From positions 3,720,001 to 3,784,000 of the forward strand of contig NC_047029.1 in assembly GCF_902652985.1 (NCBI RefSeq): 64,000 nucleotides of DNA, read 5' to 3'. The first letter of the stretch is position 1, and each line of letters opens with the position of its first letter. Positions 50,501 through 64,000 of the stretch are shown one piece after another. The DNA is from Pecten maximus (Eukaryota). Below the pieces are notes generated by a model, which searched no databases, was not told the DNA's origin, and saw nothing but the letters and a program-made list of their open reading frames with translations. A program made the position numbers and the translations under genes.

Positions 50501-53500
50501 TAGTCTATACCTACATCTGTGGTAGTCTATACGTATACCTACACCTGTGGTAGTCTATACCTACACCTGTGATAGTCTATACCTACACCTGTGGTAGTCT
50601 ATACCTACACCTGTGTCAGTCTATACCTACACCTGTGTTAGTCTATACCTACACCTGTGATAGTCTATACCTACACCTGTGGTAGTCTATACCTACACCT
50701 GTGATAGTCTATACCTACACCTGCGTTAGTCTATACCTACACCTGTGTTAGTCTATACCTACACCTGTGTTAGTCTATACCTACACCTGTGATAGTCTAT
50801 ACCTACACCTGTGTTAGTCTATACCTACACCTGTGTTAGTCTATACCTACACCTGTGTTAGTCTATACCTACACCTGTGATAGTCTATACCTTAGTATTA
50901 GCCCAACTCAGTTAGCCTATAAATTGTATATAATTATATGTGTGTATAAAGCCCATACCTACACTGTGTCTTTTTATATATAAAAACATTCACAAGTATA
51001 TCAGCCTATATATACCTACATAATATATATATATATGTTAGACAATATGTATATACACCTGTGTTAAACAATACCTGCAACTTTGCTTGCCTTAATATAT
51101 TTACATATTAATATGAACCTATATATATCAGCCTAAATTAACATAAACATATGCCTATGCACGTGATAGCCTATTCCACATGCATGTTAGCCTATTCCTC
51201 CACCCATTTTATACTACACCTCCACCAATATTAGTATGCCCCTCCACCTGCAGGATAGCCAATCTCTCCTCACCCTATTTTAGGTGGCTACTCAATAATC
51301 TATTTAACACCTTCTTAAGGGGGTTCATTCCTAGGTCCCTTCTCTCCTCAATGTGTACAAGGGGAAACATTTGATTCGTTTTTTCATATCTTATTAACTT
51401 TTAAATAGCACAGTACCAAAAAAATTAAATAGTACAGGTCACAAAAATCATATCATATAGAAAATAATAAAATAAATAAGACAAACTTTAAAAATTAAAA
51501 AAAAAAACACCTTAAAAAAACCTTCCAAAATTTAAATTCTAAAATATATTACAGTGTATTATTGTGTGAGCATCAACTGATTTCTGTCATAAGATAGGGT
51601 TGGAGTTTATCTTTCACATTACAGGGCAGTATAGTGGACCAAACTATATTCCGATGGGTGGACAGATGACCATGTATACAGGACAGATGCAAGTTATGCT
51701 ATTTACTCCTATCATTTTTAATGATATTCATAAATTGATTTATGAACATGGATGAATGGGGTGTATTATATATACAGTATTACAAAGAACAGTGCATCAT
51801 TTAACTTCTACAGGACACACAAGGTCATTCTTGGATAGAGTTTGATCCAGAGAGCAGCACAAAGAGAAGAGAGTGGCTAAAATCCCCGGGATGGGGCAGC
51901 TGGGTGAGAAAGGGGTTAGGCTGTGAAACACCACACCCAATAAGCAAGGTTACAAGCTACAATTCAACACTACCTGTCGCATATATTTCCATCGCCCTTT
52001 TCCACTGTCACACCGCACAAATTTTACTTGATTGTACGCGGCCTCCATACAGATGTTTTCGTCAGTCATTATCTGCTGCTTGCCCGTGTAGGCAAACACC
52101 TGGTGTAATACATGCAGATTTAGCATTATGGACACATGGGAGTGGTAGACATGCCCACAGCTAGGTGGACAAGCCTTACGCCACAGCATGCCAGCCTCAC
52201 AGCTCTGGAAACAATCTTATTAATACCAGCAGCCATGACACAGACGCCTATGTCCACAGACACCAGATACACAGGACACAGGGAGGTAAACTTCAGGATA
52301 ATCTTAATCGTTACAGGTTAATCTGTTGTATCATTAATTAATAATGATTAAAATATGCCACCCAAAGCATGGTACAGAGAAAATGTATGAATAAACAGGA
52401 CAAAAGGTCCATAAACTTTCCATGCAATTAACTGGAAATAGAAATCATAAATCAACATTGGGACATGTTATTTTATCCTGAGAAGTTGACCAGCTGTGTA
52501 ATGCAGTTCCAGTGCGTGTGGTCAGTTGGCATGGCTGGTCAGTTCTGTAGATGTCAGATCAAGGACAGCCAGTTACCTGTCCGTTATAATCCCACTGCTG
52601 GTTGCCACCCAGACCATGACACTGAAACAATTTTACCGGCCCACCGATGGACGACACATCCAAACACAAGTCATCAGTTTGTAAAGCTTTCTTTTTGGTG
52701 TAAGAAAATATCTGAAAGTGTGCAGTCATGGTTAATCAAATTAACGATTTAATGATTATTCTTATTTCCAGACATCCCTTTATCAGAAGATCAACATAAG
52801 TAATTCATAACAATCATTAATATCAATATATATTGCAAGTTTATATTTTGAAATTAAAACATGACATTGTAAAAATGTTGCAGCAAATATTCAAAGAAAC
52901 TATTCCAAGACTGATTTATGTTACCCCACACCCATATGCATGACTTTCTAAAACACAAGACAAGAAGTTAATCTGAAAGTCTTGAAGGAGTCTTGAACAC
53001 CAATTCTCAAAATCCACCTAGATTGCATATTCTTTACTTGTGAATTGAACCAAAGCCTTTTAAATTGTTTTATCATAGTTTTTACCCATTCTTTCAATTG
53101 ATTCCTCTACCCTACCTGTTTGTCTCCCTTGAAATATTGTCTATTTTTATTGATGGCATCTCCTAAAGTATTGTCCAACTACCTCCCCTGTTTTTATTGA
53201 CGGCATCTCCTAAAATATTGGCAAAATATTCCCTTGCCCCAGCTACCTAAATGCATTCCATAAAATATATGATTAATTCCCATCTTACATAGTTAACTCC
53301 TCTATAATATCCAAATACTTCCCCTGCCTTGCCTAGCTGCCTGTCGTTATTTATGTGATAAATTCATCATTCATTCTTGCCTAGTTACCTCCCCTATAAT
53401 ATCTGATTACCTCCCCTGCCTAACCTAGTTACCTCCCCTATAATATCTGATTATCTCCCCTACCTTACCTGGATACCTCCCCTATAATATCTGAATACCT

Positions 53501-56500
53501 CCCCTGTCTTACATAGTTACCTCCCCTGCCTTACATAGTTACCTCCCCTATAATATCCGATTACTTCCCCATCTTACCTGGTTGCCGCCCATGCCATGAC
53601 AGTTGACAAGGCCAACTTTCTCCCCGCTCTTCCTTCCCATACTGTCCACACAGTGACCTGTCTCTTTGTTACGAATCTGTTAACATAAAACAGGTATGAC
53701 GAATCTGTTAACATGAAACAGGTATGACGAATGTGTTACCATATAACAGGTATGACGAATGTGTTAACATAAAACAGGTATGATGAATGTGTTACCATAT
53801 AACAGGTATGACAAATCTGTTAACATAAAACAGGTATGACGAATCTGTTATAACAGGTAACCGGTATGACAAATCTGTTAACATGAAACAGGTATGACAA
53901 ATCTGTTAACATGAAACAGGTATGACAAAGTGTTGTAATGAAAAAAGAATATTTCTTATTGCGTATAATATAACATTTTACTTTAAAGGAATCAACAAAA
54001 CCTACATACCTATATGTATGCATTCTGGTGTATTTTTTTTCTCTGCATAAATTGGGATTAAAATATTTATTAAAACTTTATTAAAACTTCTATGTTTGAC
54101 TGTAGATGTTCAGATTTAAAGAGAACCCTCTCCTAACAAAGGCTTAAATATAGATAGGTGCACTGTATATAGAGTATATAGTAATAACGATAGTGAGTTC
54201 CAGTATAGGTACTGGATCCTAACAAACAGATGTTCGCTGGATACGTATTACTAGAAATAGTAAATTGGTAGTGTAGTAATAACTACAGTACAGACAAGTA
54301 AATTGATGAGGCAATTCACCCCTTAATGAAGATGCAAGTAGATTACAAACGATCACATACAAACATTTAACATGAAACAGTTACATAACTTTAGTAGATA
54401 ATCAACAAACAATATCTTTCTGTTTATGTTAATGATCTGTTCGGTCCATAATTCATTCGCTGGAAGCCTATTCTAATTAATCAGAAAAAGAAAATATCTT
54501 TGGTGACATATATATAAATAGATACACAAATGTCTTCATACTGAATGACTTTTGGTCTCCAGTACAAAAGTCACCGATTACCCCCCTACCATTCTAACAC
54601 CAGACACGTTTGTAAATGCCAGTAATTCTCACCTCTCCCAAGGCGAAGTAGTCCACTGGCATCTGAGATTCTGGATACACGTTTTCTAAGTACCAGCGGA
54701 AACTTTTACAATTCATTTTCTTCCTCATGTCTTTTCTAGCTGTCACGTCCCCGTAACTGGTACTTTTCACCGCTGCAGTAAATAAGACATTTCAGAACTT
54801 TAATAAATTGTTAAACATGCAGTACCATCCTCTGATGACAAATCACTTTCGAAAGAGAAAGCGTATGAGGAAATAGCACTTGGGGCATTTTTTGAGTGAG
54901 TCTGAACACTGAAAATAGAGCAAAGTTAATCCAGATATAGGATGTACAGCATCTTTGCTTAAAAAAAAGATCCACAGGTCAGGAGTAAAAAGATGAATTC
55001 ATTCCACAGCTTCCTGAGGCAAAGTTAAATGGGAACATCCAATAAACTTCCTTAATATAGACCAAAATCATTATTTTCTACCTCAAAATTCTGTGATTAA
55101 TGAATCTTAAATTCAAAAGAAATCAAAAGTGAAGATTCATACCCTTAACCATCTGTTTGTCTGGTTAGAAGGAGACAGCAAATGTAGAAGAGAAAGATTG
55201 ATACCTGGATTTATTTTATAGAAGAATTCCTTGTATTCATCCATCCACACCTCCACAATACGTTGTGTGTTGTGGTTGATGATGCGTGCCACGCCCCCAG
55301 GCCAGGAGTATGGTGAGGTCTTCCTGAACACGTGTCCGACTCTGGAGCAGGTCACAATAAACACCTGTCCGCCGCACATCCATACCTACAAAACAGGGAG
55401 ATTGATACACATCCATACGTACAAAACAGGGAGATTGATACACATCCATACGTACAAAACAGGGAGATTGATACACATCCATACCTACAAAACAGGGAGA
55501 TTGATACACATCCATACGTACAAAACAGGGAGATTGATACACATCCATACGTACAAAACAGGGAGATTGATACACATCCATACCTACAAAACAGGGAGAT
55601 TGATACACATCCATACGTACAAAACAGGGAGATGTATACACATCCATACGTACAAAACAGGGAGATGGATACACATCCATACGTACAAAACAGGGAGATT
55701 GATACACATCCATACCTACAAAACAGGGAGATGGATACACATCCATACCTACAAAACAAGGAGATTGATACACATCCATACGTACAAAATAGGGAGATTG
55801 ATACACATCCATACCTACAAAACAGGGAGATTGATACACATCCATACGTACAAAACAGGGAGATTGATACACATCCATACCTACAAAACAGGGAGATGTA
55901 TACACATCCATACCTACAAAATAAGGGAGACGGACACACATCCATACCTACAAAACAGGGAGATGTATACACATCCATACCTACAAAACAGGGAGATTGA
56001 TACACATCCATACGTACAAAACAGGGAGATTGATACACATCCATACGTACAAAACAGGGAGATGTATACACATCCATACGTACAAGTCCCTAACACTCCC
56101 CTACCCCATATATACAATACTTACTCAGTGAAGGGCATCTCTAAGTCCCTAACACTCCCCTACCCCATATATACAATACTTACTCAGTGAAGGACATCTC
56201 TAAGTCCCTAACACTCCCCTACCCCCTATATACAATACTTACTCAGTGAAAAACATCTCCAAGTCCCTAACACTCCCCTACCCCATATATACAATACTTA
56301 CTCAGTGAAGGACATCTCCAAGTCCCTAACACTCCCCTACCCCATATATACAATACTTACTCAGTGAAGGACATCTCTAAGTCACTAACACTCCCCTACC
56401 CCATATATACCATACTTACTCAGTGAAGGACATCTCCAAGTCCCTAACACTCCCCTACCCCATATATACAATACTTACTCAGTGAAAAACATCTCCAAGT

Positions 56501-59500
56501 CCCTAACACTCCCCTACCCCATACAATACTCACTCTGAAAGGCATCTCTAAGTCCCTAACACTCCCCTACCCCATACAATACTCACTCTGAAGGACATCT
56601 CTAAGTCCCTAACACTCCCCTACCCCATATATACAATACTTACTCAGTGAAGGACATCTCTAAGTCCCTAACACTCCCCTACCCCATATATACAATACTT
56701 ACTCAGTGAAGGACATCTCTAAGTCCCTAACACTCCCCTACCCCATATATACAATACTTACTCAGTGAAGGACATCTCCAAGTCCCTAACACTCCCCTAC
56801 CCCATATATACAATACTTACTCAGTGAAAAACATCTCCAAGTCCCTAACACTCCCCTACACCATATATACAATACTTACTCAGTGAAGGACATCTCCAAG
56901 TCCCTAACACTCCCCTACACCATATATACAATACTTACTCAGTGAAAAACATCTCCAAGTCCCTAACACTCCCCTACACCATATATACAATACTTACTCA
57001 GTGAAGGACATCTCCAAGTCCCTAACACTCCCCTACCCCATATATACAATACTTACTCAGTGAAGGACATCTCTAAGTCCCTAACACTCCCCTACCCCAT
57101 ATATACAATACTTACTCAGTGAAGGACATCTCTAAGTCCCTAACACTCCCCTACCCCATATATACAATACTTACTCAGTGAAGGACATCTCTAAGTCCCT
57201 AACACTCCCCTACCCCATATATACAATACTTACTCAGTGAAGGACATCAGTCCCTAACACTCCCCTACCCCATATATACAATACTTACTCAGTAAAGGAT
57301 ATCTCTAAGTCCCTAACACTCCCCTACCCCATACATCTCTAAGTCCCTAACACTCCCCTACCCCATATATACAATACTTACTCAGTGAAGGACATCTCTA
57401 AGTCCCTAACACTCCCCTACCCCCTATATACAATACTTACTCAGTGAAAAAACATCTCCAAGTCCCTAACACTCCCCTACCCCATATATACAATACTTAC
57501 TCAGTGAAGGACATCTCCAAGTCCCTAACACTCCCCTACCCCATATATACAATACTTACTCAGTGAAGGACATCTCTAAGTCACTAACACTCCCCTACCC
57601 CATATATACCATACTTACTCAGTGAAGGACATCTCCAAGTCCCTAACACTCCCCTACCCCATATATACAATACTTACTCAGTGAAAAACATCTCCAAGTC
57701 CCTAACACTCCCCTACCCCATACAATACTCACTCTGAAGGACATCTCTAAGTCCCTAACACTCCCCTACCCCATACAATACTCACTCTGAAGGGCATCTC
57801 TAAGTCCCTAACACTCCCCTACCCCATATATACAATACTTACTCTGAAGGACATCTCTAAGTCCCTAACACTCCCCTACCCCATACAATACTCACTCTGA
57901 AGGGCATCTCTAAGTCCCTAACACTCCCCTACCCCATACAATACTCACTCTGAAGGACATCTCTAAGTCCCTAACACTCCCCTACCCCATATATACAATA
58001 CTTACTCAGTGAAGGACATCTCTAAGTCCCTAACACTCCCCTACCCCATATATACAATACTTACTCAGTGAAGGACATCTCCAAGTCCCTAACACTCCCC
58101 TACACCATATATACAATACTTACTCAGTGAAAAACATCTCCAAGTCCCTAACACTCCCCTACACCATATATACAATACTTACTCAGTGAAGGACATCTCC
58201 AAGTCCCTAACACTCCCCTACCCCATATATACAATACTTACTCAGTGAAGGACATCTCTAAGTCCCTAACACTCCCCTACCCCATATATACAATACTTAC
58301 TCAGTGAAGGACATCTCTAAGTCCCTAACACTCCCCTACCCCATATATACAATACTTACTCAGTGAAGGACATCTCTAAGTCCCTAACACTCCCCTACCC
58401 CATATATACAATACTTACTCAGTGAAGGACATCAGTCCCTAACACTCCCCTACCCCATATATACAATACTTACTCAGTAAAGGATATCTCTAAGTCCCTA
58501 ACACTCCCCTACCCCATACATCTCTAAGTCCCTAACACTCCCCTACCCCATATATACAATACTTACTCAGTGAAGGACATCTCTAAGTCCCTAACACTCC
58601 CCTACCCCCTATATACAATACTTACTCAGTGAAAAACATCTCCAAGTCCCTAACACTCCCCTACCCCATATATACAATACTTACTCAGTGAAGGACATCT
58701 CCAAGTCCCTAACACTCCCCTACCCCATATATACAATACTTACTCAGTGAAGGACATCTCTAAGTCACTAACACTCCCCTACCCCATATATACCATACTT
58801 ACTCAGTGAAGGACATCTCCAAGTCCCTAACACTCCCCTACCCCATATATACAATACTTACTCAGTGAAAAACATCTCCAAGTCCCTAACACTCCCCTAC
58901 CCCATACAATACTCACTCTGAAGGACATCTCTAAGTCCCTAACACTCCCCTACCCCATACAATACTCACTCTGAAGGGCATCTCTAAGTCCCTAACACTC
59001 CCCTACCCCATATATACAATACTTACTCTGAAGGACATCTCTAAGTCCCTAACACTCCCCTACCCCATACAATACTCACTCTGAAGGGCATCTCTAAGTC
59101 CCTAACACTCCCCTACCCCATACAATACTCACTCTGAAGGACATCTCTAAGTCCCTAACACTCCCCTACCCCATATATACAATACTTACTCAGTGAAGGA
59201 CATCTCTAAGTCCCTAACACTCCCCTACCCCATATATACAATACTTACTCAGTGAAGGACATCTCTAAGTCCCTAACACTCCCCTACCCCATATATACAA
59301 TACTTACTCAGTGAAGGACATCTCCAAGTCCCTAACACTCCCCTACCCCATATATACAATACTTACTCAGTGAAAAACATCTCCAAGTCCCTAACACTCC
59401 CCTACACCATATATACAATACTTACTCAGTGAAGGACATCTCCAAGTCCCTAACACTCCCCTACACCATATATACAATACTTACTCAGTGAAAACATCTC

Positions 59501-62500
59501 CAAGTCCCTAACACTCCCCTACACCATATATACAATACTTACTCAGTGAAGGACATCTCCAAGTCCCTAACACTCCCCTACCCCATATATACAATACTTA
59601 CTCAGTGAAGGACATCTCTAAGTCCCTAACACTCCCCTACCCCATATATACAATACTTACTCAGTGAAGGACATCTCTAAGTCCCTAACACTCCCCTACC
59701 CCATATATACAATACTTACTCAGTGAAGGACATCTCTAAGTCCCTAACACTCCCCTACCCCATATATACAATACTTACTCAGTGAAGGACATCAGTCCCT
59801 AACACTCCCCTACCCCATATATACAATACTTACTCAGTAAAGGATATCTCTAAGTCCCTAACACTCCCCTACCCCATACATCTCTAAGTCCCTAACACTC
59901 CCCTACCCCATACATACAATACTTACTCAGTGAAAAACATCTCTAAGTCCCTAACACTCCCCTACCCCATACATACAATAATTACTCAGTGAAGGGCATC
60001 TCTAAGTCCCTAACACTCCCCTACCCCATGTATACAATACTTACTCAGTGAAGGACATCTCTAAGTCCCTAACACTCCCCTACCCCATATATACAATACT
60101 TACTCAGTGAAGGACATGTCTAAGTCCCTAACACTCCCCTACCCCATATATACAATACTTACTCAGTGAAGGGCATCTCTAAGTCCCTAACACTCCCCTA
60201 CCCCATACATCTCTAAGTCCCTAACACTCCCCTACCCCATATATACAATACTTACTCAGTGAAGGGCATCTCTAAGTCCCTAACACTCCCCTACCCCATA
60301 CATCTCTAAGTCGCTAACACTCCCCTACCCCATATATACAATACTTACTCAGTGAAGGACATCTCTAAGTCCCTAACACTCCCCTACCCCATATATACAA
60401 TACTTACTCAGTGAAGGACATCTCTAAGTCCCTAACACTCCCCTACCCCATATATACAATACTTACTCAGTGAAGGACATCTCTAAGTCCCTAACACTCC
60501 CCTACCCCATACAATACTCACTCTGAAGGACATCTCTAAGTCCCTAACACTCCCCTACCCCATACAATACTCACTCTGAAGGACATCTCTAAGTCCCTAA
60601 CACTCCCCTACCCCATACAATACTTACTCAGTGAAGGACATCTCTAAGTCCCTAACACTCCCCTACCCCATACAATACTCACTCTGAAGGACATCTCCAA
60701 GTTTTCACCGCCCCATATATCCATGCCTTCATCGTAGGAGCCAACCTCATAGAAGTAGCTTCTATCAATGGCAAATAGCCCACCTGCCATTGTAGGAGTT
60801 CTGTGAATACAAATATCAGTTTTACTAAATACATTGTAAGAGTTCATTTAATATAAACATCATACTAAATATCTGTCACCAAAGTCAAAACAGCTGAAGT
60901 TGGCTTTGTCTTTAGTATGTGTAGTGATCATTGGAGAAGTTGTAAGTTTACCCCCATAGATCTTCTACATCATATGACTGAAATCTTTACTCAAATATCC
61001 AGCATTTAAATTCATATTTAGTGCTTTACCCAGGCATTGTCTACTGCAAGCAACTGGAACTCACAAAAAAAAAAAATATGTAGCAAAATATAGATGAAGA
61101 TTTCTGAGAAGTTTTTTTTATAAGTCAGGATCAATAGAATCTATCATGGGTTTGTTCCGTGGACAGGGATATATCAACCCGAGTGTAAGAGTTTGGCCAG
61201 TCAGCACGAGGCTTGTGTCACATAGCGCGTGCGGCTGTCTTTACCCCCCCTCCCCCCGATCGATTTATCTTTTCCCTAGCAACCGTCATATAACCCTGTG
61301 AAGTATGGGAGAAAAATCAATATCTATAGCTAGTGTGTCTACAGTTTCCATAATTTGTCGGGTAACTGTGCGATCTCCATTTCTGAGAAGTTATTTTATA
61401 AGTCAGGATAAATGAATCCATATCTAGTGTGTCTACAGTTTCCATACTTTGTCGAGTTACTGCGACCTACATTTCTGAGAAGTTATTTTATAAGTCAGGA
61501 TAAATGAATCAATATCTAGTGTGTCTACAGTTTCCATACTTTGTGGGGTTACTGCGATCTCCATTTCTGAGAAGTTATTTTATAAGTCAGGATAAATAAA
61601 TCAATATCTAGTGTGTCTACAGTTTCCATACTTTGTCGGGTTACTGCGACCTACATTTCTGAGAAGTTATTTTATAAGTCAGGATAAATGAATCAATATC
61701 TAGTGTGTCTACAGTTTCCATACTTTGTGGGGTTACTACGACCTACATTTCTGAGAAGTTATTTTATAAGTCAGGATAAATGAATCAATATCTAGTGTGT
61801 CTACAGTTTCCATACTTTGTGGGGTTACTACGACCTACATTTCTGAGAAGTTATTTTATAAGTCAGGATAAATGAATCAATATCTAGTGTGTCTACATTT
61901 CCATACTTTGTGGGGTTACTGCGATCTCCATTTCGTCGGTCCAGCTCCCTCTGCGGTACAGGATACCACCTAAAGTTGAGTTTCCAGTTAAAACCACCCC
62001 AGGTCATATCAGATCCAGTAATATATTCAAACGTGTCATCACTGATGACGTCAATGATTGGGCAAACCACAGAGGTCCTACAACAGAACATAACATAGAA
62101 GAGTCAACACTTGTTGTTTAAGATAATATATACAAACAACAAAACACAACAAAGTCAACACTCATGTTTTAGAATCTATTCACATACCAAATAAGAGTTG
62201 TTTTGATCAAAATCACTGGTTATAGCTTAATCTTGATTAGGCCAAATAAAATTAATTTCTTGTTTCTCAGGCCCGCCCGCATCCAATATGAACCCCCCGC
62301 ACCACTCACTTTTTATTGAAATCAAAAAATAAAAACGTCCGCGCCGAAAAATAAATTCCGGAAAAAAATCCGACCTTGGTTGCCGCAATATCCGGAACTT
62401 GCCCGATCCGTGTTTTAGAATCTCCCAAATCAGATCATTGAAACGTTTGTTTATCTTTTAGAAGCTTGATTTTTCGATTGCACATGGTAGCAATGATTTC

Positions 62501-64000
62501 CATTCAAATATCTTTTTCTGGCAGTGTTATTTTACCCTGGACAATCATATCGAATTATAGCGACACTTGTTCGTTTGGCGAACTTTACAAGGGTCTGCGC
62601 GATGGATCGCTTGGTCCCGACGACTGGTCGTTTCCGCCAAAATTCACGGATCATGATGTGTCGGCCGCGATCGGCAAACGGAAAGCTGATGTTTTTGATA
62701 AAGTAATGATTGATGTCTTTGAAGGTAAACGAAGCAACAAAACTGTTTGGACATTATGTAAGAACCAAATCTTAAAACATAGGGAGTTCCTGATCACTTG
62801 TGTACATCTGGTGAACATTGAACATAAAATTGTATTTCAATTGTTTTTCAATTTAAATTGCAAGTTTAATACCAGAAAATAAAGACAATAGTTTAAAATT
62901 AAGATTTCTTTATTCATTTTATGCATTTAACAATTGACACAATTTCAAATCACATGATTTATGTATATGTATCATTATGTGACTGAGAGAAAAAAATAAA
63001 AAAAAGTCCCTCCCTCATCACATTTTTAGGTAGTAAAAAAAAAAAAAAAAAAGCCTCCCTCCCTCATCCTTTTTTGGAAAAATGTGCCTGAGAAACAAGA
63101 CATTAATTTTGTTTGGCCTTAGTGAAAATCTCATTTCTCCTTTACTTCAAAACCTGAGTGTGTGTATTTCTTAAAATGGGCAGCTTGTAGTAAGAGACTG
63201 ATGACTGTTATAGTTTCCTGAAATTCTGTCAAGTTAGTTTTACCAGAAATTTTATCAGGACTTTAAAATAAAACTGTGATTAGCATTATCACCTTTTGAA
63301 CAACTGGGCCCAGATTGTAATATAATTTTATAATAGTGTATACCTGTCCTTGTGGATCTCGGCTAATAATGGTTCCAGCCAGCCCTCCGTACACTCACAG
63401 TGAGCATCCAGGAATGTGATTACATCTCCCTTAGCCGCTGCTGCTCCTACAAACATCACCAAAATCCTTGACCAACATTCATCACCAATTATAGAATTAT
63501 AAAAGATTATAACATTTTCTTAAAATTAATCATGATTTGATATGTGCCTCTTGGTTGTTAAATGCAGTCAATGGTGGGCAATATATTTAAACCTGCATTA
63601 TAGATAGCAGCAGCACTTTGTAAAATAATTTGATGATACCAGTAGTCAGAACAGCACCTACATTTTAGTTCTTGTGCTCTGAGTATCTAGTTCTTGTGCT
63701 CTGAGTATCTAGTTCTTGTGCTCTGAGTATCATCAGGTCAAAATTTTGGGATCAAGAAATGATATCATCATGTATCTGTAGTTTTCTGATTAAGTAACAC
63801 GTAAGACATTGTTGTCTAAAGAGCTTTTTTTCCAGGAGTTGTTACACTAAAAAGAATCAACTGCATTGATTAAACTTCAGAGCCCAGATGATTGAAAGCA
63901 TACTCTTTATATATAAATCAATGTTTTACAGTCAGTAATTACCTGTCAGTCTAGCCCGGATCAGTCCGTTTCGTGACTCTGACCTCATCACCTTCGTAAG
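41510..64000 (-). CDS. GALNT1: Polypeptide N-acetylgalactosaminyltransferase, GALNT1/13-like, 5'-partial. Exons >64000-63943, 63446-63344, 62077-61907, 60800-60683, 55385-55205, 54772-54633, 53676-53578, 52711-52577 (alternative 52099-51974), 45027-44949, 41565-41510
   Basis: Hallmark motifs [58 protein letters not shown], and a ricin-type lectin domain. All junctions are GT-AG and phase-consistent. GALNT1 vs GALNT13 orthology cannot be resolved by eye. Confidence 0.96.
41975..44900. repeat. 40-48-bp minisatellite in the last GALNT intron
   Basis: gacaggacctagacattgtgggcaagttttggagaggggagatggata, about 60 copies. Confidence 0.95.
44949..45027 (-). CDS. GALNT1: GALNT lectin gamma exon [26 protein letters not shown]
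   Basis: 79 nt, tttacag|...|gtaaga, phase 0-1. Confidence 0.9.
46020..46320 (+). mobile_element. Decayed SINE
   Basis: gtgtccttggacaaaacactttacccttattgc core; tail taaaccaaacaaacaaa. Confidence 0.6.
47550..47975. repeat. 27-bp minisatellite (gagtatgggttatttcccctttgtaat)
   Basis: About 15 copies. Confidence 0.95.
49200..50890. repeat. Two adjacent related minisatellites: 21-bp (49200-49957) and 22-bp (49972-50890)
   Basis: acctacacagagttagactaa vs acctacacctgtgttagtctat. Confidence 0.95.
51974..52099 (-). CDS. GALNT1: Putative alternative lectin beta exon [43 protein letters not shown]
   Basis: 126 nt, phase 0-0, caccag|...|gtagtg; aligns to exon A (F.YT.K...TD..C......VK...C......W.Y..Q). 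Confidence 0.8.
52577..52711 (-). CDS. GALNT1: GALNT lectin beta exon [46 protein letters not shown]
   Basis: 135 nt, phase 0-0, canonical CLD and QxW. Confidence 0.95.
53280..53577 (-). repeat. Degenerate repeat derived from the donor junction of exon 53578-53676
   Basis: ttacctggttgccgccc (junction) vs ttacctggatacctccc, taacctagttacctccc. Confidence 0.7.
53578..53676 (-). CDS. GALNT1: GALNT lectin alpha exon [33 protein letters not shown]
   Basis: 99 nt, phase 0-0. Confidence 0.95.
53677..53930 (-). repeat. 28-bp repeat of the acceptor junction of exon 53578-53676
   Basis: Sense unit catacctgttttatgttaacag|ATTCGT x~9. Confidence 0.9.
54633..54772 (-). CDS. GALNT1: GALNT exon [46 protein letters not shown]
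   Basis: 140 nt, phase 1-0; absent from the ORF track. Confidence 0.95.
55205..55385 (-). CDS. GALNT1: GALNT exon [22 protein letters not shown]...FYKINP
   Basis: 181 nt, phase 0-1. Confidence 0.96.
55386..56085 (-). repeat. 33-bp acceptor-junction minisatellite
   Basis: Sense unit tgtatcaatctccctgttttgta(g/c)|GTATGGATG x~21. Confidence 0.95.
56086..60682 (-). repeat. 53-59-bp donor-junction minisatellite
   Basis: Sense unit GAGATGTCCTTCAGA|gtgagtattgtatggggtaggggagtgttagggactta and variant ...TTCActga|gtaagt..., about 80 copies. Confidence 0.95.
60683..60800 (-). CDS. GALNT1: GALNT exon TPTMAGGLF...[11 protein letters not shown]
   Basis: 118 nt, phase 2-0, donor gtgagt. Confidence 0.96.
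61330..61906 (-). repeat. 92-bp donor-junction minisatellite
   Basis: Donor copies at 61905, 61814, 61722, 61630, 61538, 61446; each unit includes the last 27 nt of the exon. Confidence 0.95.
61907..62077 (-). CDS. GALNT1: GALNT exon [18 protein letters not shown]...[11 protein letters not shown]
   Basis: 171 nt, phase 2-2, donor gtatgg. Confidence 0.96.
62240..63118. mobile_element. Non-autonomous TIR element (PIF/Harbinger- or CryptonV-like) inserted into a MITE
   Basis: ~33-bp imperfect TIR ggccaaataaaattaatttcttgtttctcaggc; TTA duplication; empty site visible in the copy at c.39689. Confidence 0.8.
63344..63446 (-). CDS. GALNT1: GALNT exon with DxH motif ([33 protein letters not shown])
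   Basis: 103 nt, phase 1-2. Confidence 0.96.
63667..63731. repeat. 22-bp repeat x3 (agttcttgtgctctgagtatct)
   Basis: Directly visible. Confidence 0.85.
63943..64000 (-). CDS. GALNT1: GALNT exon (partial) [20 protein letters not shown]
   Basis: GLIRARL motif; donor gtaatt. Confidence 0.93.

What the first reader, a model, noticed from the sequence alone, without database searches (positions are those of the whole stretch)
61354..61906. 92-bp array forms five in-frame 27-nt micro-exon plus mini-intron cassettes
Seen (sense strand): each unit is gtatgg...cctgac...cttctcag (64-65 nt with GT, branch-like CTGAC and AG) followed by a 27-nt phase 2-2 copy of the exon end. Intact copies are at 61816-61842, 61724-61750, 61632-61658 (all NVGRSNPTK), 61540-61566 (NGDRSNPTK, identical to the exon) and 61448-61474 (NVGRSNSTK). 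None has a stop, and some differences are synonymous (CGC/CGT, CCC/CCG). The sixth copy has lost GT and frame. Inference: 0-5 nine-residue inserts could be added just before PTMAGGLF in the catalytic domain, giving exon/intron gain by tandem duplication in progress. The introns may be too short for this species.
Basis: partly seen in the sequence, partly recalled or inferred. Interest (0 to 1): 0.8.

Follow-up and report, generated by a model that had tools for sequence, protein, structure and literature searches.

The report
Splice-donor minisatellite in scallop GalNAc-transferase intron
A 92-base piece spanning the end of a scallop glycosyltransferase exon and the start of its intron was copied about seven times in tandem; the copies look like tiny in-frame exons, but four transcriptomes show only the normal splice, so this is most likely an inert junction repeat of a kind known from amphioxus and from one human gene.

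Summary
On the minus strand, the last 27 nt of exon 62077-61907 plus the first 64-65 nt of its intron are repeated head to tail. There are six intact units and a seventh degenerate one.

The genome is the Pecten maximus (king scallop) assembly. The gene is a GalNAc-T1-type polypeptide GalNAc-transferase.

The cassette reading is not supported:
- **RNA:** contigs from four transcriptome runs of four studies join 61907 directly to 60800. None has a 27-nt insert, and none lies on the array.
- **No coding constraint:** the exon-like parts vary more than the intron-like parts (5/27 against 3/65 columns), with 3 nonsynonymous and 2 synonymous changes.
- **Young and local:** the unit occurs nowhere else in the genome, and the orthologous intron of two relatives has no array.

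The array began as a duplication between two GAAAT microhomologies. A dispersed repeat later split its last unit.

It is one of at least four or five arrays in this gene seeded at exon/intron boundaries. A relative carries such arrays at other junctions of the orthologue. First readers noted the same pattern on other pieces of this genome; those notes are unchecked.

The closest known cases are the amphioxus "mirage" minisatellites and the human F7 intron-7 VNTR, where the first donor is used. Rare or tissue-specific inclusion cannot be excluded from contigs.

The parts
61907..62077 (-). Authentic exon (171 nt, phase 1 to phase 2) of a GalNAc-T1-type polypeptide GalNAc-transferase. It ends ...[10 protein letters not shown] + AA.
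   Evidence: Translation. PDB GalNAc-T1 1xhb/8v9q at E about 1e-30. tblastn. RNA contigs cover 61907-62076 and join both neighbouring exons.
61901..61906 (-). Authentic 5' splice site GTATGG, the first of six identical donors and the one used in RNA.
   Evidence: Joint 61907|60800, skipping 1106 nt with GT..AG on the minus strand, in X1 and X3. The same joint appears in a synonymous allele in X3, X7 and X10.
61322..61934 (-). 92-bp tandem array as called by TRF: six intact units plus the 5' part of a seventh.
   Evidence: The unit is unique to this locus in the 918-Mb genome.
61383..61842 (-). Five pseudo-cassettes: 27-nt exon-like copies at 61842-61816, 61750-61724, 61658-61632, 61566-61540 and 61474-61448, each followed by a 65-nt intron-like part with GTATGG, CTGAC and CTTCTCAG.
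   Evidence: No RNA contig lies here.
61316..61382 (-). 5' part of the degenerate seventh unit (2-nt insertion, GT changed to TT).
61145..61315 (.). Dispersed repeat inserted into the seventh unit (boundaries approximate).
   Evidence: 1164 first-look candidates and 117 scored matches genome-wide. Very high summed contig depth, with tens of contigs in all four runs.
61100..61144 (-). 3' part of the seventh unit (...ATCCTGACTTATAAAAAAAACTTCTCAG) plus AAAT, the intron-side microhomology where the array meets unique intron sequence.
   Evidence: Local alignment to the unit and sequence.
60801..61099 (-). Unique remainder of the intron, ending in the authentic acceptor ...ttcacag.
60683..60800 (-). 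Next exon (TPTMAGGLF...[11 protein letters not shown]). Its own donor starts the neighbouring 59-bp array.
56083..60702 (-). Neighbouring donor-seeded 59-bp array (about 78 units) whose first unit includes the last 20 nt of exon 60800-60683. This is context for the finding, not part of the 92-bp array.

Best explanation
This is a young, locally born minisatellite that spans an exon/intron boundary, the same kind as the amphioxus 'mirage' repeats. A 92-bp segment, made of the last 27 nt of the exon plus the first 64-65 nt of the intron, was duplicated in tandem between two GAAAT microhomologies: cgacGAAATgga in the exon and ctcaGAAATcttc in the intron. The duplicate was then amplified to about seven units, probably by unequal exchange or replication slippage. 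Later a dispersed repeat inserted into the last unit. The array is tolerated because the spliceosome uses the first (authentic) donor and the single distant acceptor at 60801, so every copy is removed as intron. That each copy looks like a 64-65-nt mini-intron plus a 27-nt in-frame micro-exon follows from where the intron-side breakpoint happened to fall (just after a CAG, at a distance divisible by three), not from function. Shown: the anatomy, the microhomology, uniqueness in the genome, absence in relatives, use of the first donor in RNA, and lack of coding constraint. Inferred: the amplification mechanism and neutrality.
For: Anatomy and microhomology. The unit is found only at this locus in the whole assembly, so it is not a transposon. 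RNA: a 2386-nt X1 contig carries exons 63445-63343 / 62076-61907 / 60800-60681 with no extra letters. X3, X7 and X10 show the same joint in an allele differing only by two synonymous changes in the last 6 exon letters. Depth is zero over 61322-61881 in all four runs from four studies. Variable columns are 5/27 in the exon-like part against 3/65 in the intron-like part (Fisher p=0.045; p=0.02 for copies 2-6), with 3 nonsynonymous and 2 synonymous changes. The orthologous intron in two relatives (95% amino-acid identity in this exon) is about 210 and about 390 nt with no array. The same relative has a 91-bp x25 array seeded at the upstream donor and an 80-bp x3 array seeded at an acceptor. In this window, 4 of 6 arrays in the 52.5-64 kb part of the gene overlap an exon boundary and a fifth ends 7 nt from one. 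Precedents: in amphioxus mirages RT-PCR shows regular splicing (PMC3087553). In the human F7 IVS7 37-bp VNTR the most upstream of identical donors is selected (PMC1557585).
Against: Only assembled contigs were available, and these drop rare variants, so low-level or tissue-specific inclusion is not excluded. Six further joints were not displayed. The mini-intron acceptor is no weaker in pyrimidine content than the authentic acceptor at 60800 (0.61 each), and 64-65 nt is physically within reach of animal spliceosomes. Signal strength alone therefore does not forbid use. Why arrays are seeded so often at junctions is unexplained. A neutral-tolerance model alone predicts mostly internal arrays.
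Confidence: 0.85

Rival explanations
1. One reading: the units are working cassettes. Mini-introns of 64-65 nt are removed and one to five 27-nt micro-exons are included, adding 9-45 residues (NVGRSNPTK repeats) just before TPTMAGGLF in the catalytic domain. This would be exon birth by tandem duplication in progress.
For: All signals are present in five units. The donors are identical to the authentic one. There is a YTNAY-like CTGAC 21 nt before the AG. Acceptor pyrimidine content equals that of the authentic acceptor at 60800. The length is 27 = 9 codons with an open frame. The idea that mirage units could be recruited as exons has been proposed for amphioxus globins (PMC3087553).
Against: No insert in any of four transcriptome assemblies, and no contig on the array. 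No coding constraint on the copies. No array in the orthologous intron of relatives. Among about 35 exon gaps of GalNAc-transferase paralogues in this genome the smallest are about 130-155 nt and none is under 100 (rough). Micro-exons of 27 nt usually need dedicated enhancers (general knowledge). The F7 precedent shows that downstream identical donors stay silent.
Confidence: 0.05
2. The repeated decoy donors have a regulatory role without entering the protein. Examples would be extra U1 snRNP binding that helps define the weak AAA|GTATGG donor or protects the intron, or occasional use of a downstream donor (+92n nt, frameshift and stop in the second unit) as unproductive splicing that tunes expression.
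For: Six identical U1-type sites lie within 550 nt of a suboptimal donor. Junction arrays recur in this gene and in a relative, which could hint at benefit. F7 pseudo-sites are functional when the first site is disabled.
Against: No contig shows use of a downstream donor. The arrays sit at different junctions in different species and are absent at the orthologous site, which looks like turnover rather than conservation. Nothing here tests U1 binding.
Confidence: 0.07
3. Assembly artefact: the array or its copy number was produced by mis-assembly of long reads.
For: No independent DNA run was laid on it. The runs used were RNA and do not cover the array.
Against: A 0.6-kb array is far shorter than PacBio reads. 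The units carry distinct ordered variants, and a dispersed repeat is inserted in the last unit. Comparable arrays exist in an independent HiFi assembly of a relative.
Confidence: 0.02

Closest known systems
Amphioxus 'mirage' minisatellites (Adh3, Canestro et al. 2002, as cited in Ebner et al. 2010; globin genes BflGb6/BflGb9, PMC3087553)
   Same: Tandem repeats whose unit spans an exon/intron boundary, so the splice site and a piece of exon are copied into the intron. Many units keep AG/GT signals. Regular splicing is not disturbed. Edge units are more diverged than inner ones. Both donor and acceptor boundaries can be seeded.
   Different: Described in cephalochordates, whereas this is a bivalve mollusc. 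I found no paper in the held library describing it in bivalves. Length or somatic instability, shown for Adh3, was not tested here. The generating mechanism is unknown in both.
Human F7 intron 7 37-bp VNTR spanning the exon 7 donor (Borensztajn et al. 2006, PMC1557585)
   Same: The first repeat element spans the exon/intron boundary, so the authentic donor is followed by identical pseudo-donors that stay silent. The most upstream site is chosen.
   Different: The unit is 37 bp, too short for any mini-intron/micro-exon reading. It is a single locus in a genome where such arrays are rare. The choice mechanism was shown by mutagenesis there and is only inferred here from RNA contigs.
Intron gain by tandem duplication of an AGGT-containing exon segment (Rogers model, discussed in PMC3087553)
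   Same: A tandem duplication creates extra splice-signal pairs that could in principle define a new intron and exon.
   Different: In that model the duplication lies inside an exon and the new intron is spliced, restoring the original mRNA. Here the duplication spans an existing donor, the copies lie in an existing intron, and no new splice event is seen.
Alternatively spliced micro-exons (27 nt or shorter) of animals
   Same: The size (27 nt), the in-frame length and the position in a surface-loop-like, length-variable stretch of the protein.
   Different: Known micro-exons are conserved, under purifying selection and detectably included. None of these holds here.

Membership tests
Exon/intron-boundary ('mirage'-type) minisatellite | Head-to-tail repeat with minisatellite-size unit | tested here: met
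   92-bp unit, 6.7 copies, 95% matches.
Exon/intron-boundary ('mirage'-type) minisatellite | First unit spans the authentic exon/intron boundary, so exon end and splice site are repeated | tested here: met
   Unit 1 is the last 27 nt of exon 62077-61907 plus GTATGG.... The exon boundary is fixed by RNA joints.
Exon/intron-boundary ('mirage'-type) minisatellite | Regular splicing from the authentic site is retained | tested here: met
   Joint 61907|60800 in four runs of four studies. This is contig-level evidence only.
Exon/intron-boundary ('mirage'-type) minisatellite | Copy-number instability or polymorphism | not tested
   No DNA runs were laid on the array.
Alternative cassette micro-exon | Flanked by acceptor and donor signals, with length divisible by three and an open frame | tested here: met
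Alternative cassette micro-exon | Included in mature transcripts | tested here: not met
   No 27-letter insert and no contig on the copies in X1, X3, X7 or X10. Rare isoforms are not excluded.
Alternative cassette micro-exon | Conserved in relatives and under purifying selection | tested here: not met
   Absent from the orthologous introns in L001 and L002/L004. The exon-like part is more variable than the intron-like part.
Polypeptide GalNAc-transferase (GT27, GalNAc-T1/T13-like) as host gene | GT-A catalytic domain with DxH motif | tested here: met
   Exon 63465-63343 hits PF00535 (E 1.7e-9) and contains FLDAHCE.
Polypeptide GalNAc-transferase (GT27, GalNAc-T1/T13-like) as host gene | Gal/GalNAc-T motif region (WGGENLE) | tested here: met
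   Exon 60800-60683 reads ...[13 protein letters not shown] and hits PF02709. The exon of the finding matches PDB GalNAc-T1 at E 6e-31.
Polypeptide GalNAc-transferase (GT27, GalNAc-T1/T13-like) as host gene | C-terminal ricin-type lectin domain | tested here: met
   Exon 53679-53578 hits PF00652 (E 3.8e-7).

The most novel reading that the evidence does not exclude
The cassettes are spliced in at a low level or in a particular tissue or stage, giving GalNAc-T1 isoforms that differ by steps of nine residues next to the catalytic core. That would catch exon and intron birth from a junction minisatellite in the act. More broadly, splice junctions would be true hot spots of minisatellite birth in scallops as in amphioxus, two lineages with very high heterozygosity.
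Probability: 0.05. Interest if true: 0.75.

Novelty: new member of a known kind. Interest (0 to 1): 0.3.

Why it matters
This locus is an ordinary, probably neutral by-product, and the proposed protein diversity is not supported. Its value is as a clean example of a wider pattern. In the king scallop, minisatellites are repeatedly seeded at exon/intron boundaries: several in this gene, others at different junctions of the orthologue in a relative, and many first-reader notes elsewhere in the genome. Such arrays have been described as 'mirages' in amphioxus, and I found no description for molluscs in the held literature. If a genome-wide census confirms enrichment at junctions, it would point to a junction-linked duplication mechanism shared by distant, highly polymorphic marine invertebrates. 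It would also provide many natural test cases for how spliceosomes choose among identical donors.

Tried and rejected
1. The search for homologous proteins with P0063 was meant to reach named close relatives or annotated isoforms. P0063 turned out to be a nematode protein and the list was all ecdysozoans, so it was uninformative.
2. I located COX1 in the assembly to name the species. This became unnecessary once the assembly size and scaffold number (918,306,378 bp; 3,983) matched the Pecten maximus paper exactly.
3. Literature searches for boundary-spanning minisatellites in scallops, oysters or bivalves found none. That holds for the held library only.
4. Transposon origin of the 92-bp unit is rejected, because the unit is unique to this locus.
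5. The 'no stops, some synonymous differences' argument for coding constraint is rejected.
6. Judging the mini-introns non-functional from a weak acceptor is rejected, because the acceptor's pyrimidine content equals that of an authentic acceptor.
7. Minimal intron size of the species: I obtained only a rough proxy from GalNAc-transferase paralogue exon gaps, which is not a species-wide figure.
8. The ORF at 62466-62882 has no Pfam hit and lies in a young dispersed repeat, so it is not a nested gene of interest.
9. The joined (spliced) protein model was not searched.
10. No DNA runs were laid on the array, so its copy-number polymorphism remains unknown.

Full report
**Observation.** The stretch is as described. 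TRF reports a 92-bp array at 61322-61934 with 6.7 copies, 95% matches and score 1075. On the minus (sense) strand the units run 61933-61843, 61842-61751, 61750-61659, 61658-61567, 61566-61475 and 61474-61383. Each unit has a 27-nt part, AAATG(G/T)AG(A/G)TCG(C/T)AGTAAC(C/T)C(C/G)ACAAA. This is followed by GTATGGAAA(C)TGTAGACACACTAGATAT(T/G)GATT(C/T)ATTTATCCTGACTTATAAAATAACTTCTCAG, which is 64 nt in the first unit and 65 nt in the others. In phase 2 the 27-nt parts read [16 protein letters not shown] three times, NGDRSNPT and NVGRSNST, without stops. The seventh copy (61382 onward) has a 2-nt insertion and has lost the GT.

**Host gene and organism.**
- Exon 62077-61907 translates to [56 protein letters not shown]. 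It matches the solved GalNAc-T1 structures 1xhb and 8v9q at E about 1e-30.
- Neighbouring exons carry FLDAHCE (PF00535), [13 protein letters not shown] (PF02709) and a ricin-type lectin piece (PF00652).
- The window's assembly has 918,306,378 bases in 3,983 sequences. These are exactly the figures of the king scallop Pecten maximus assembly (PMC7191990).
- Exons were searched one at a time by reference. The joined protein was not built or searched.

**Anatomy and origin.**
- The exon-side edge of the unit lies in cgacGAAATgga. The array ends in the intron at ctcaGAAATcttc (about 61104-61096). The founding duplication therefore joined two GAAAT microhomologies.
- The CAG that looks like an acceptor is simply the intron sequence just before the intron-side microhomology.
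- The seventh unit is split. Its 5' part is 61382-61316 and its 3' part is 61144-61104.
- Between these two parts lies a dispersed repeat with over a thousand first-look candidates in the genome. It also shows very high summed RNA contig depth.
- The edge unit is more diverged than the inner ones, as expected for arrays homogenised by unequal exchange.
- Two units used as a query find only this locus in the whole assembly. The array was therefore born here and is not transposon-derived.
- Without the array and the insert the intron would be about 365 nt. The orthologous introns of two relatives with 95% amino-acid identity in this exon are about 210 nt (L001) and about 390 nt (L002), and neither has an array.

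**RNA evidence.** One search for runs and one lay of reads were allowed. All runs on offer were kept as Logan contigs, and I laid four runs from four studies.
- In X1 a 2386-nt contig carries 63445-63343, 62076-61907 and 60800-60681 back to back, with no extra letters. The joint 61907|60800 skips 1106 nt with GT..AG on the sense strand.
- X3 shows the same joint.
- X3, X7 and X10 also show it in an allele whose last six exon letters read CCT ACG AA instead of CCC ACA AA. Both changes are synonymous. The aligner reports this as a joint at 61913 with six letters between.
- No 27-letter insert is listed, and depth is zero over 61322-61881 in all four runs.
- Exon 60800-60683 likewise uses the first donor of the 59-bp array that follows it.
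- Contigs drop rare variants, and six further joints were not displayed. This therefore shows the main product, not the absence of minor ones.

**Do the copies behave like coding sequence?** No. Among units 1-6 there are 5 variable columns in the 27 exon-like positions against 3 in the 65 intron-like positions (Fisher p=0.045; p=0.02 for copies 2-6). The five exon-part changes are 3 nonsynonymous and 2 synonymous. This is what neutral drift gives, and the sample is small.

**Could they be spliced at all?**
- The donors are identical to the authentic one (AAA|GTATGG, a moderate site).
- The acceptor has a pyrimidine fraction of 0.61 at -20..-3, the same as the authentic acceptor at 60800. The A of CTGAC lies 21 nt before the AG.
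- The signals therefore do not forbid use. The obstacles are the size of the intron (64-65 nt) and of the exon (27 nt).
- As a rough proxy for intron size, about 35 gaps between adjacent exons of GalNAc-transferase paralogues in this genome are all above 100 nt. The smallest are about 130-155 nt. This is not a species-wide minimum.
- From general knowledge, 64-65 nt is near the lower limit for animal introns but not below it.

**Context.**
- 37% of the window is tandem arrays, in 37 merged arrays.
- In the 52.5-64 kb part of the gene, four of six arrays overlap an exon boundary and contain that exon's own sequence in their units:
  - the 92-bp array at donor 61907;
  - the 59-bp array at donor 60683;
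  - the 33-bp array at acceptor 55385;
  - the 28-bp array at acceptor 53679.
- A fifth array ends 7 nt from donor 53578. With arrays placed at random in these introns I would expect roughly 5-10% to overlap a boundary. That figure is my rough estimate, not a computed test.
- In the relative's orthologue (L004), a 91-bp x25 array starts in the exon ending ...EIHKDR, with 80 nt of exon plus 11 nt of intron per unit. An 80-bp x3 array spans an acceptor. Both sit at junctions that are array-free in P. maximus.
- Junction seeding is therefore recurrent, independent and short-lived. Most such units are far too short to mimic cassettes.
- First readers noted the same pattern on this window and on other pieces of this genome. 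Those notes are unchecked, and I tested only the part inside this window.

**Comparison with what is known.**
- Tandem repeats spanning exon/intron boundaries were named 'mirages' in amphioxus Adh3 and found again in amphioxus globin genes. There, RT-PCR showed regular splicing, and the authors raised the same idea of exon and intron gain (PMC3087553).
- In human F7 a 37-bp VNTR spans the exon 7 donor. Mutagenesis showed that the most upstream of identical donors is chosen and the pseudo-sites stay silent (PMC1557585).
- The present array meets the structural features of that kind and the feature of retained regular splicing. Instability was not tested.
- It fails two defining features of a cassette micro-exon: inclusion in transcripts and conservation with constraint.
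- I found no description of such arrays in bivalves in the held library.

**Verdict.**
- This is most likely (about 0.85) an inert boundary-spanning minisatellite, created by a microhomology-mediated tandem duplication and then amplified. It is tolerated because the first donor is used.
- The cassette appearance is a coincidence of unit length and breakpoint.
- Functional cassettes have about 0.05 probability, a regulatory decoy-donor role about 0.07, and an assembly artefact about 0.02.
- It is a new member of a known kind. Interest for this locus is low to moderate, and the wider junction-seeding pattern deserves a genome-wide census.

Noticed in passing
window 55375-60702: The 5.3-kb intron after exon 60800-60683 is filled by a 59-bp array seeded at its donor (about 78 units, 56083-60702). 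This abuts a 33-bp array seeded at the acceptor of exon 55385 (55375-56085, 21.5 units). RNA contigs use the first donor.
   Followed up: partly
window 53376-53926: A 28-bp x9 array (53671-53926) overlaps the acceptor of exon 53679-53578 by 9 nt. A 22/44-bp array (53376-53570), whose unit contains CAG|GTATTA on the sense strand, ends 7 nt from that exon's donor.
   Followed up: partly
L004 3792-4031 and 5715-7992 (relative, ENA ERZ25073814 contig): The orthologous gene of a related bivalve has a 91-bp x25 array beginning in the exon ...[27 protein letters not shown] plus GTAATT donor, and an 80-bp x3 array spanning an acceptor. Both are at junctions that are array-free in the window.
   Followed up: partly
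window about 61145-61315: A dispersed repeat is inserted in the last unit of the 92-bp array. It has 1164 first-look candidates genome-wide, a two-part structure (query parts 31-129 and 131-217 often occur separately), and very high summed RNA contig depth.
   Followed up: partly
window 62239-63024: A young dispersed repeat lies in the upstream intron, with 40 or more copies at 97-99% identity on many chromosomes. It is covered by RNA contigs at about ten times the depth of the GalNAc-transferase exons in X1. Its 138-aa ORF (62466-62882, + strand) has no Pfam hit.
   Followed up: partly
window 63119-63311: Another high-copy repeat. Many RNA contigs have internal deletions of 97-132 nt and 'opposite strands' joints, which suggests an inverted-repeat (MITE-like) element.
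   Followed up: no
window 61907-61912: Three of four transcriptome runs carry an allele with two synonymous changes in the last two full codons of the exon (CCT ACG instead of CCC ACA). None of the array copies has this variant.
   Followed up: no
window 1-64000: 37% of the window (37 merged arrays) is minisatellite DNA, far above the 1% 'simple repeats' given for the assembly in its paper. Many unit consensus sequences contain donor-like GTGAGT, GTAAGG or GTATG motifs.
   Followed up: no
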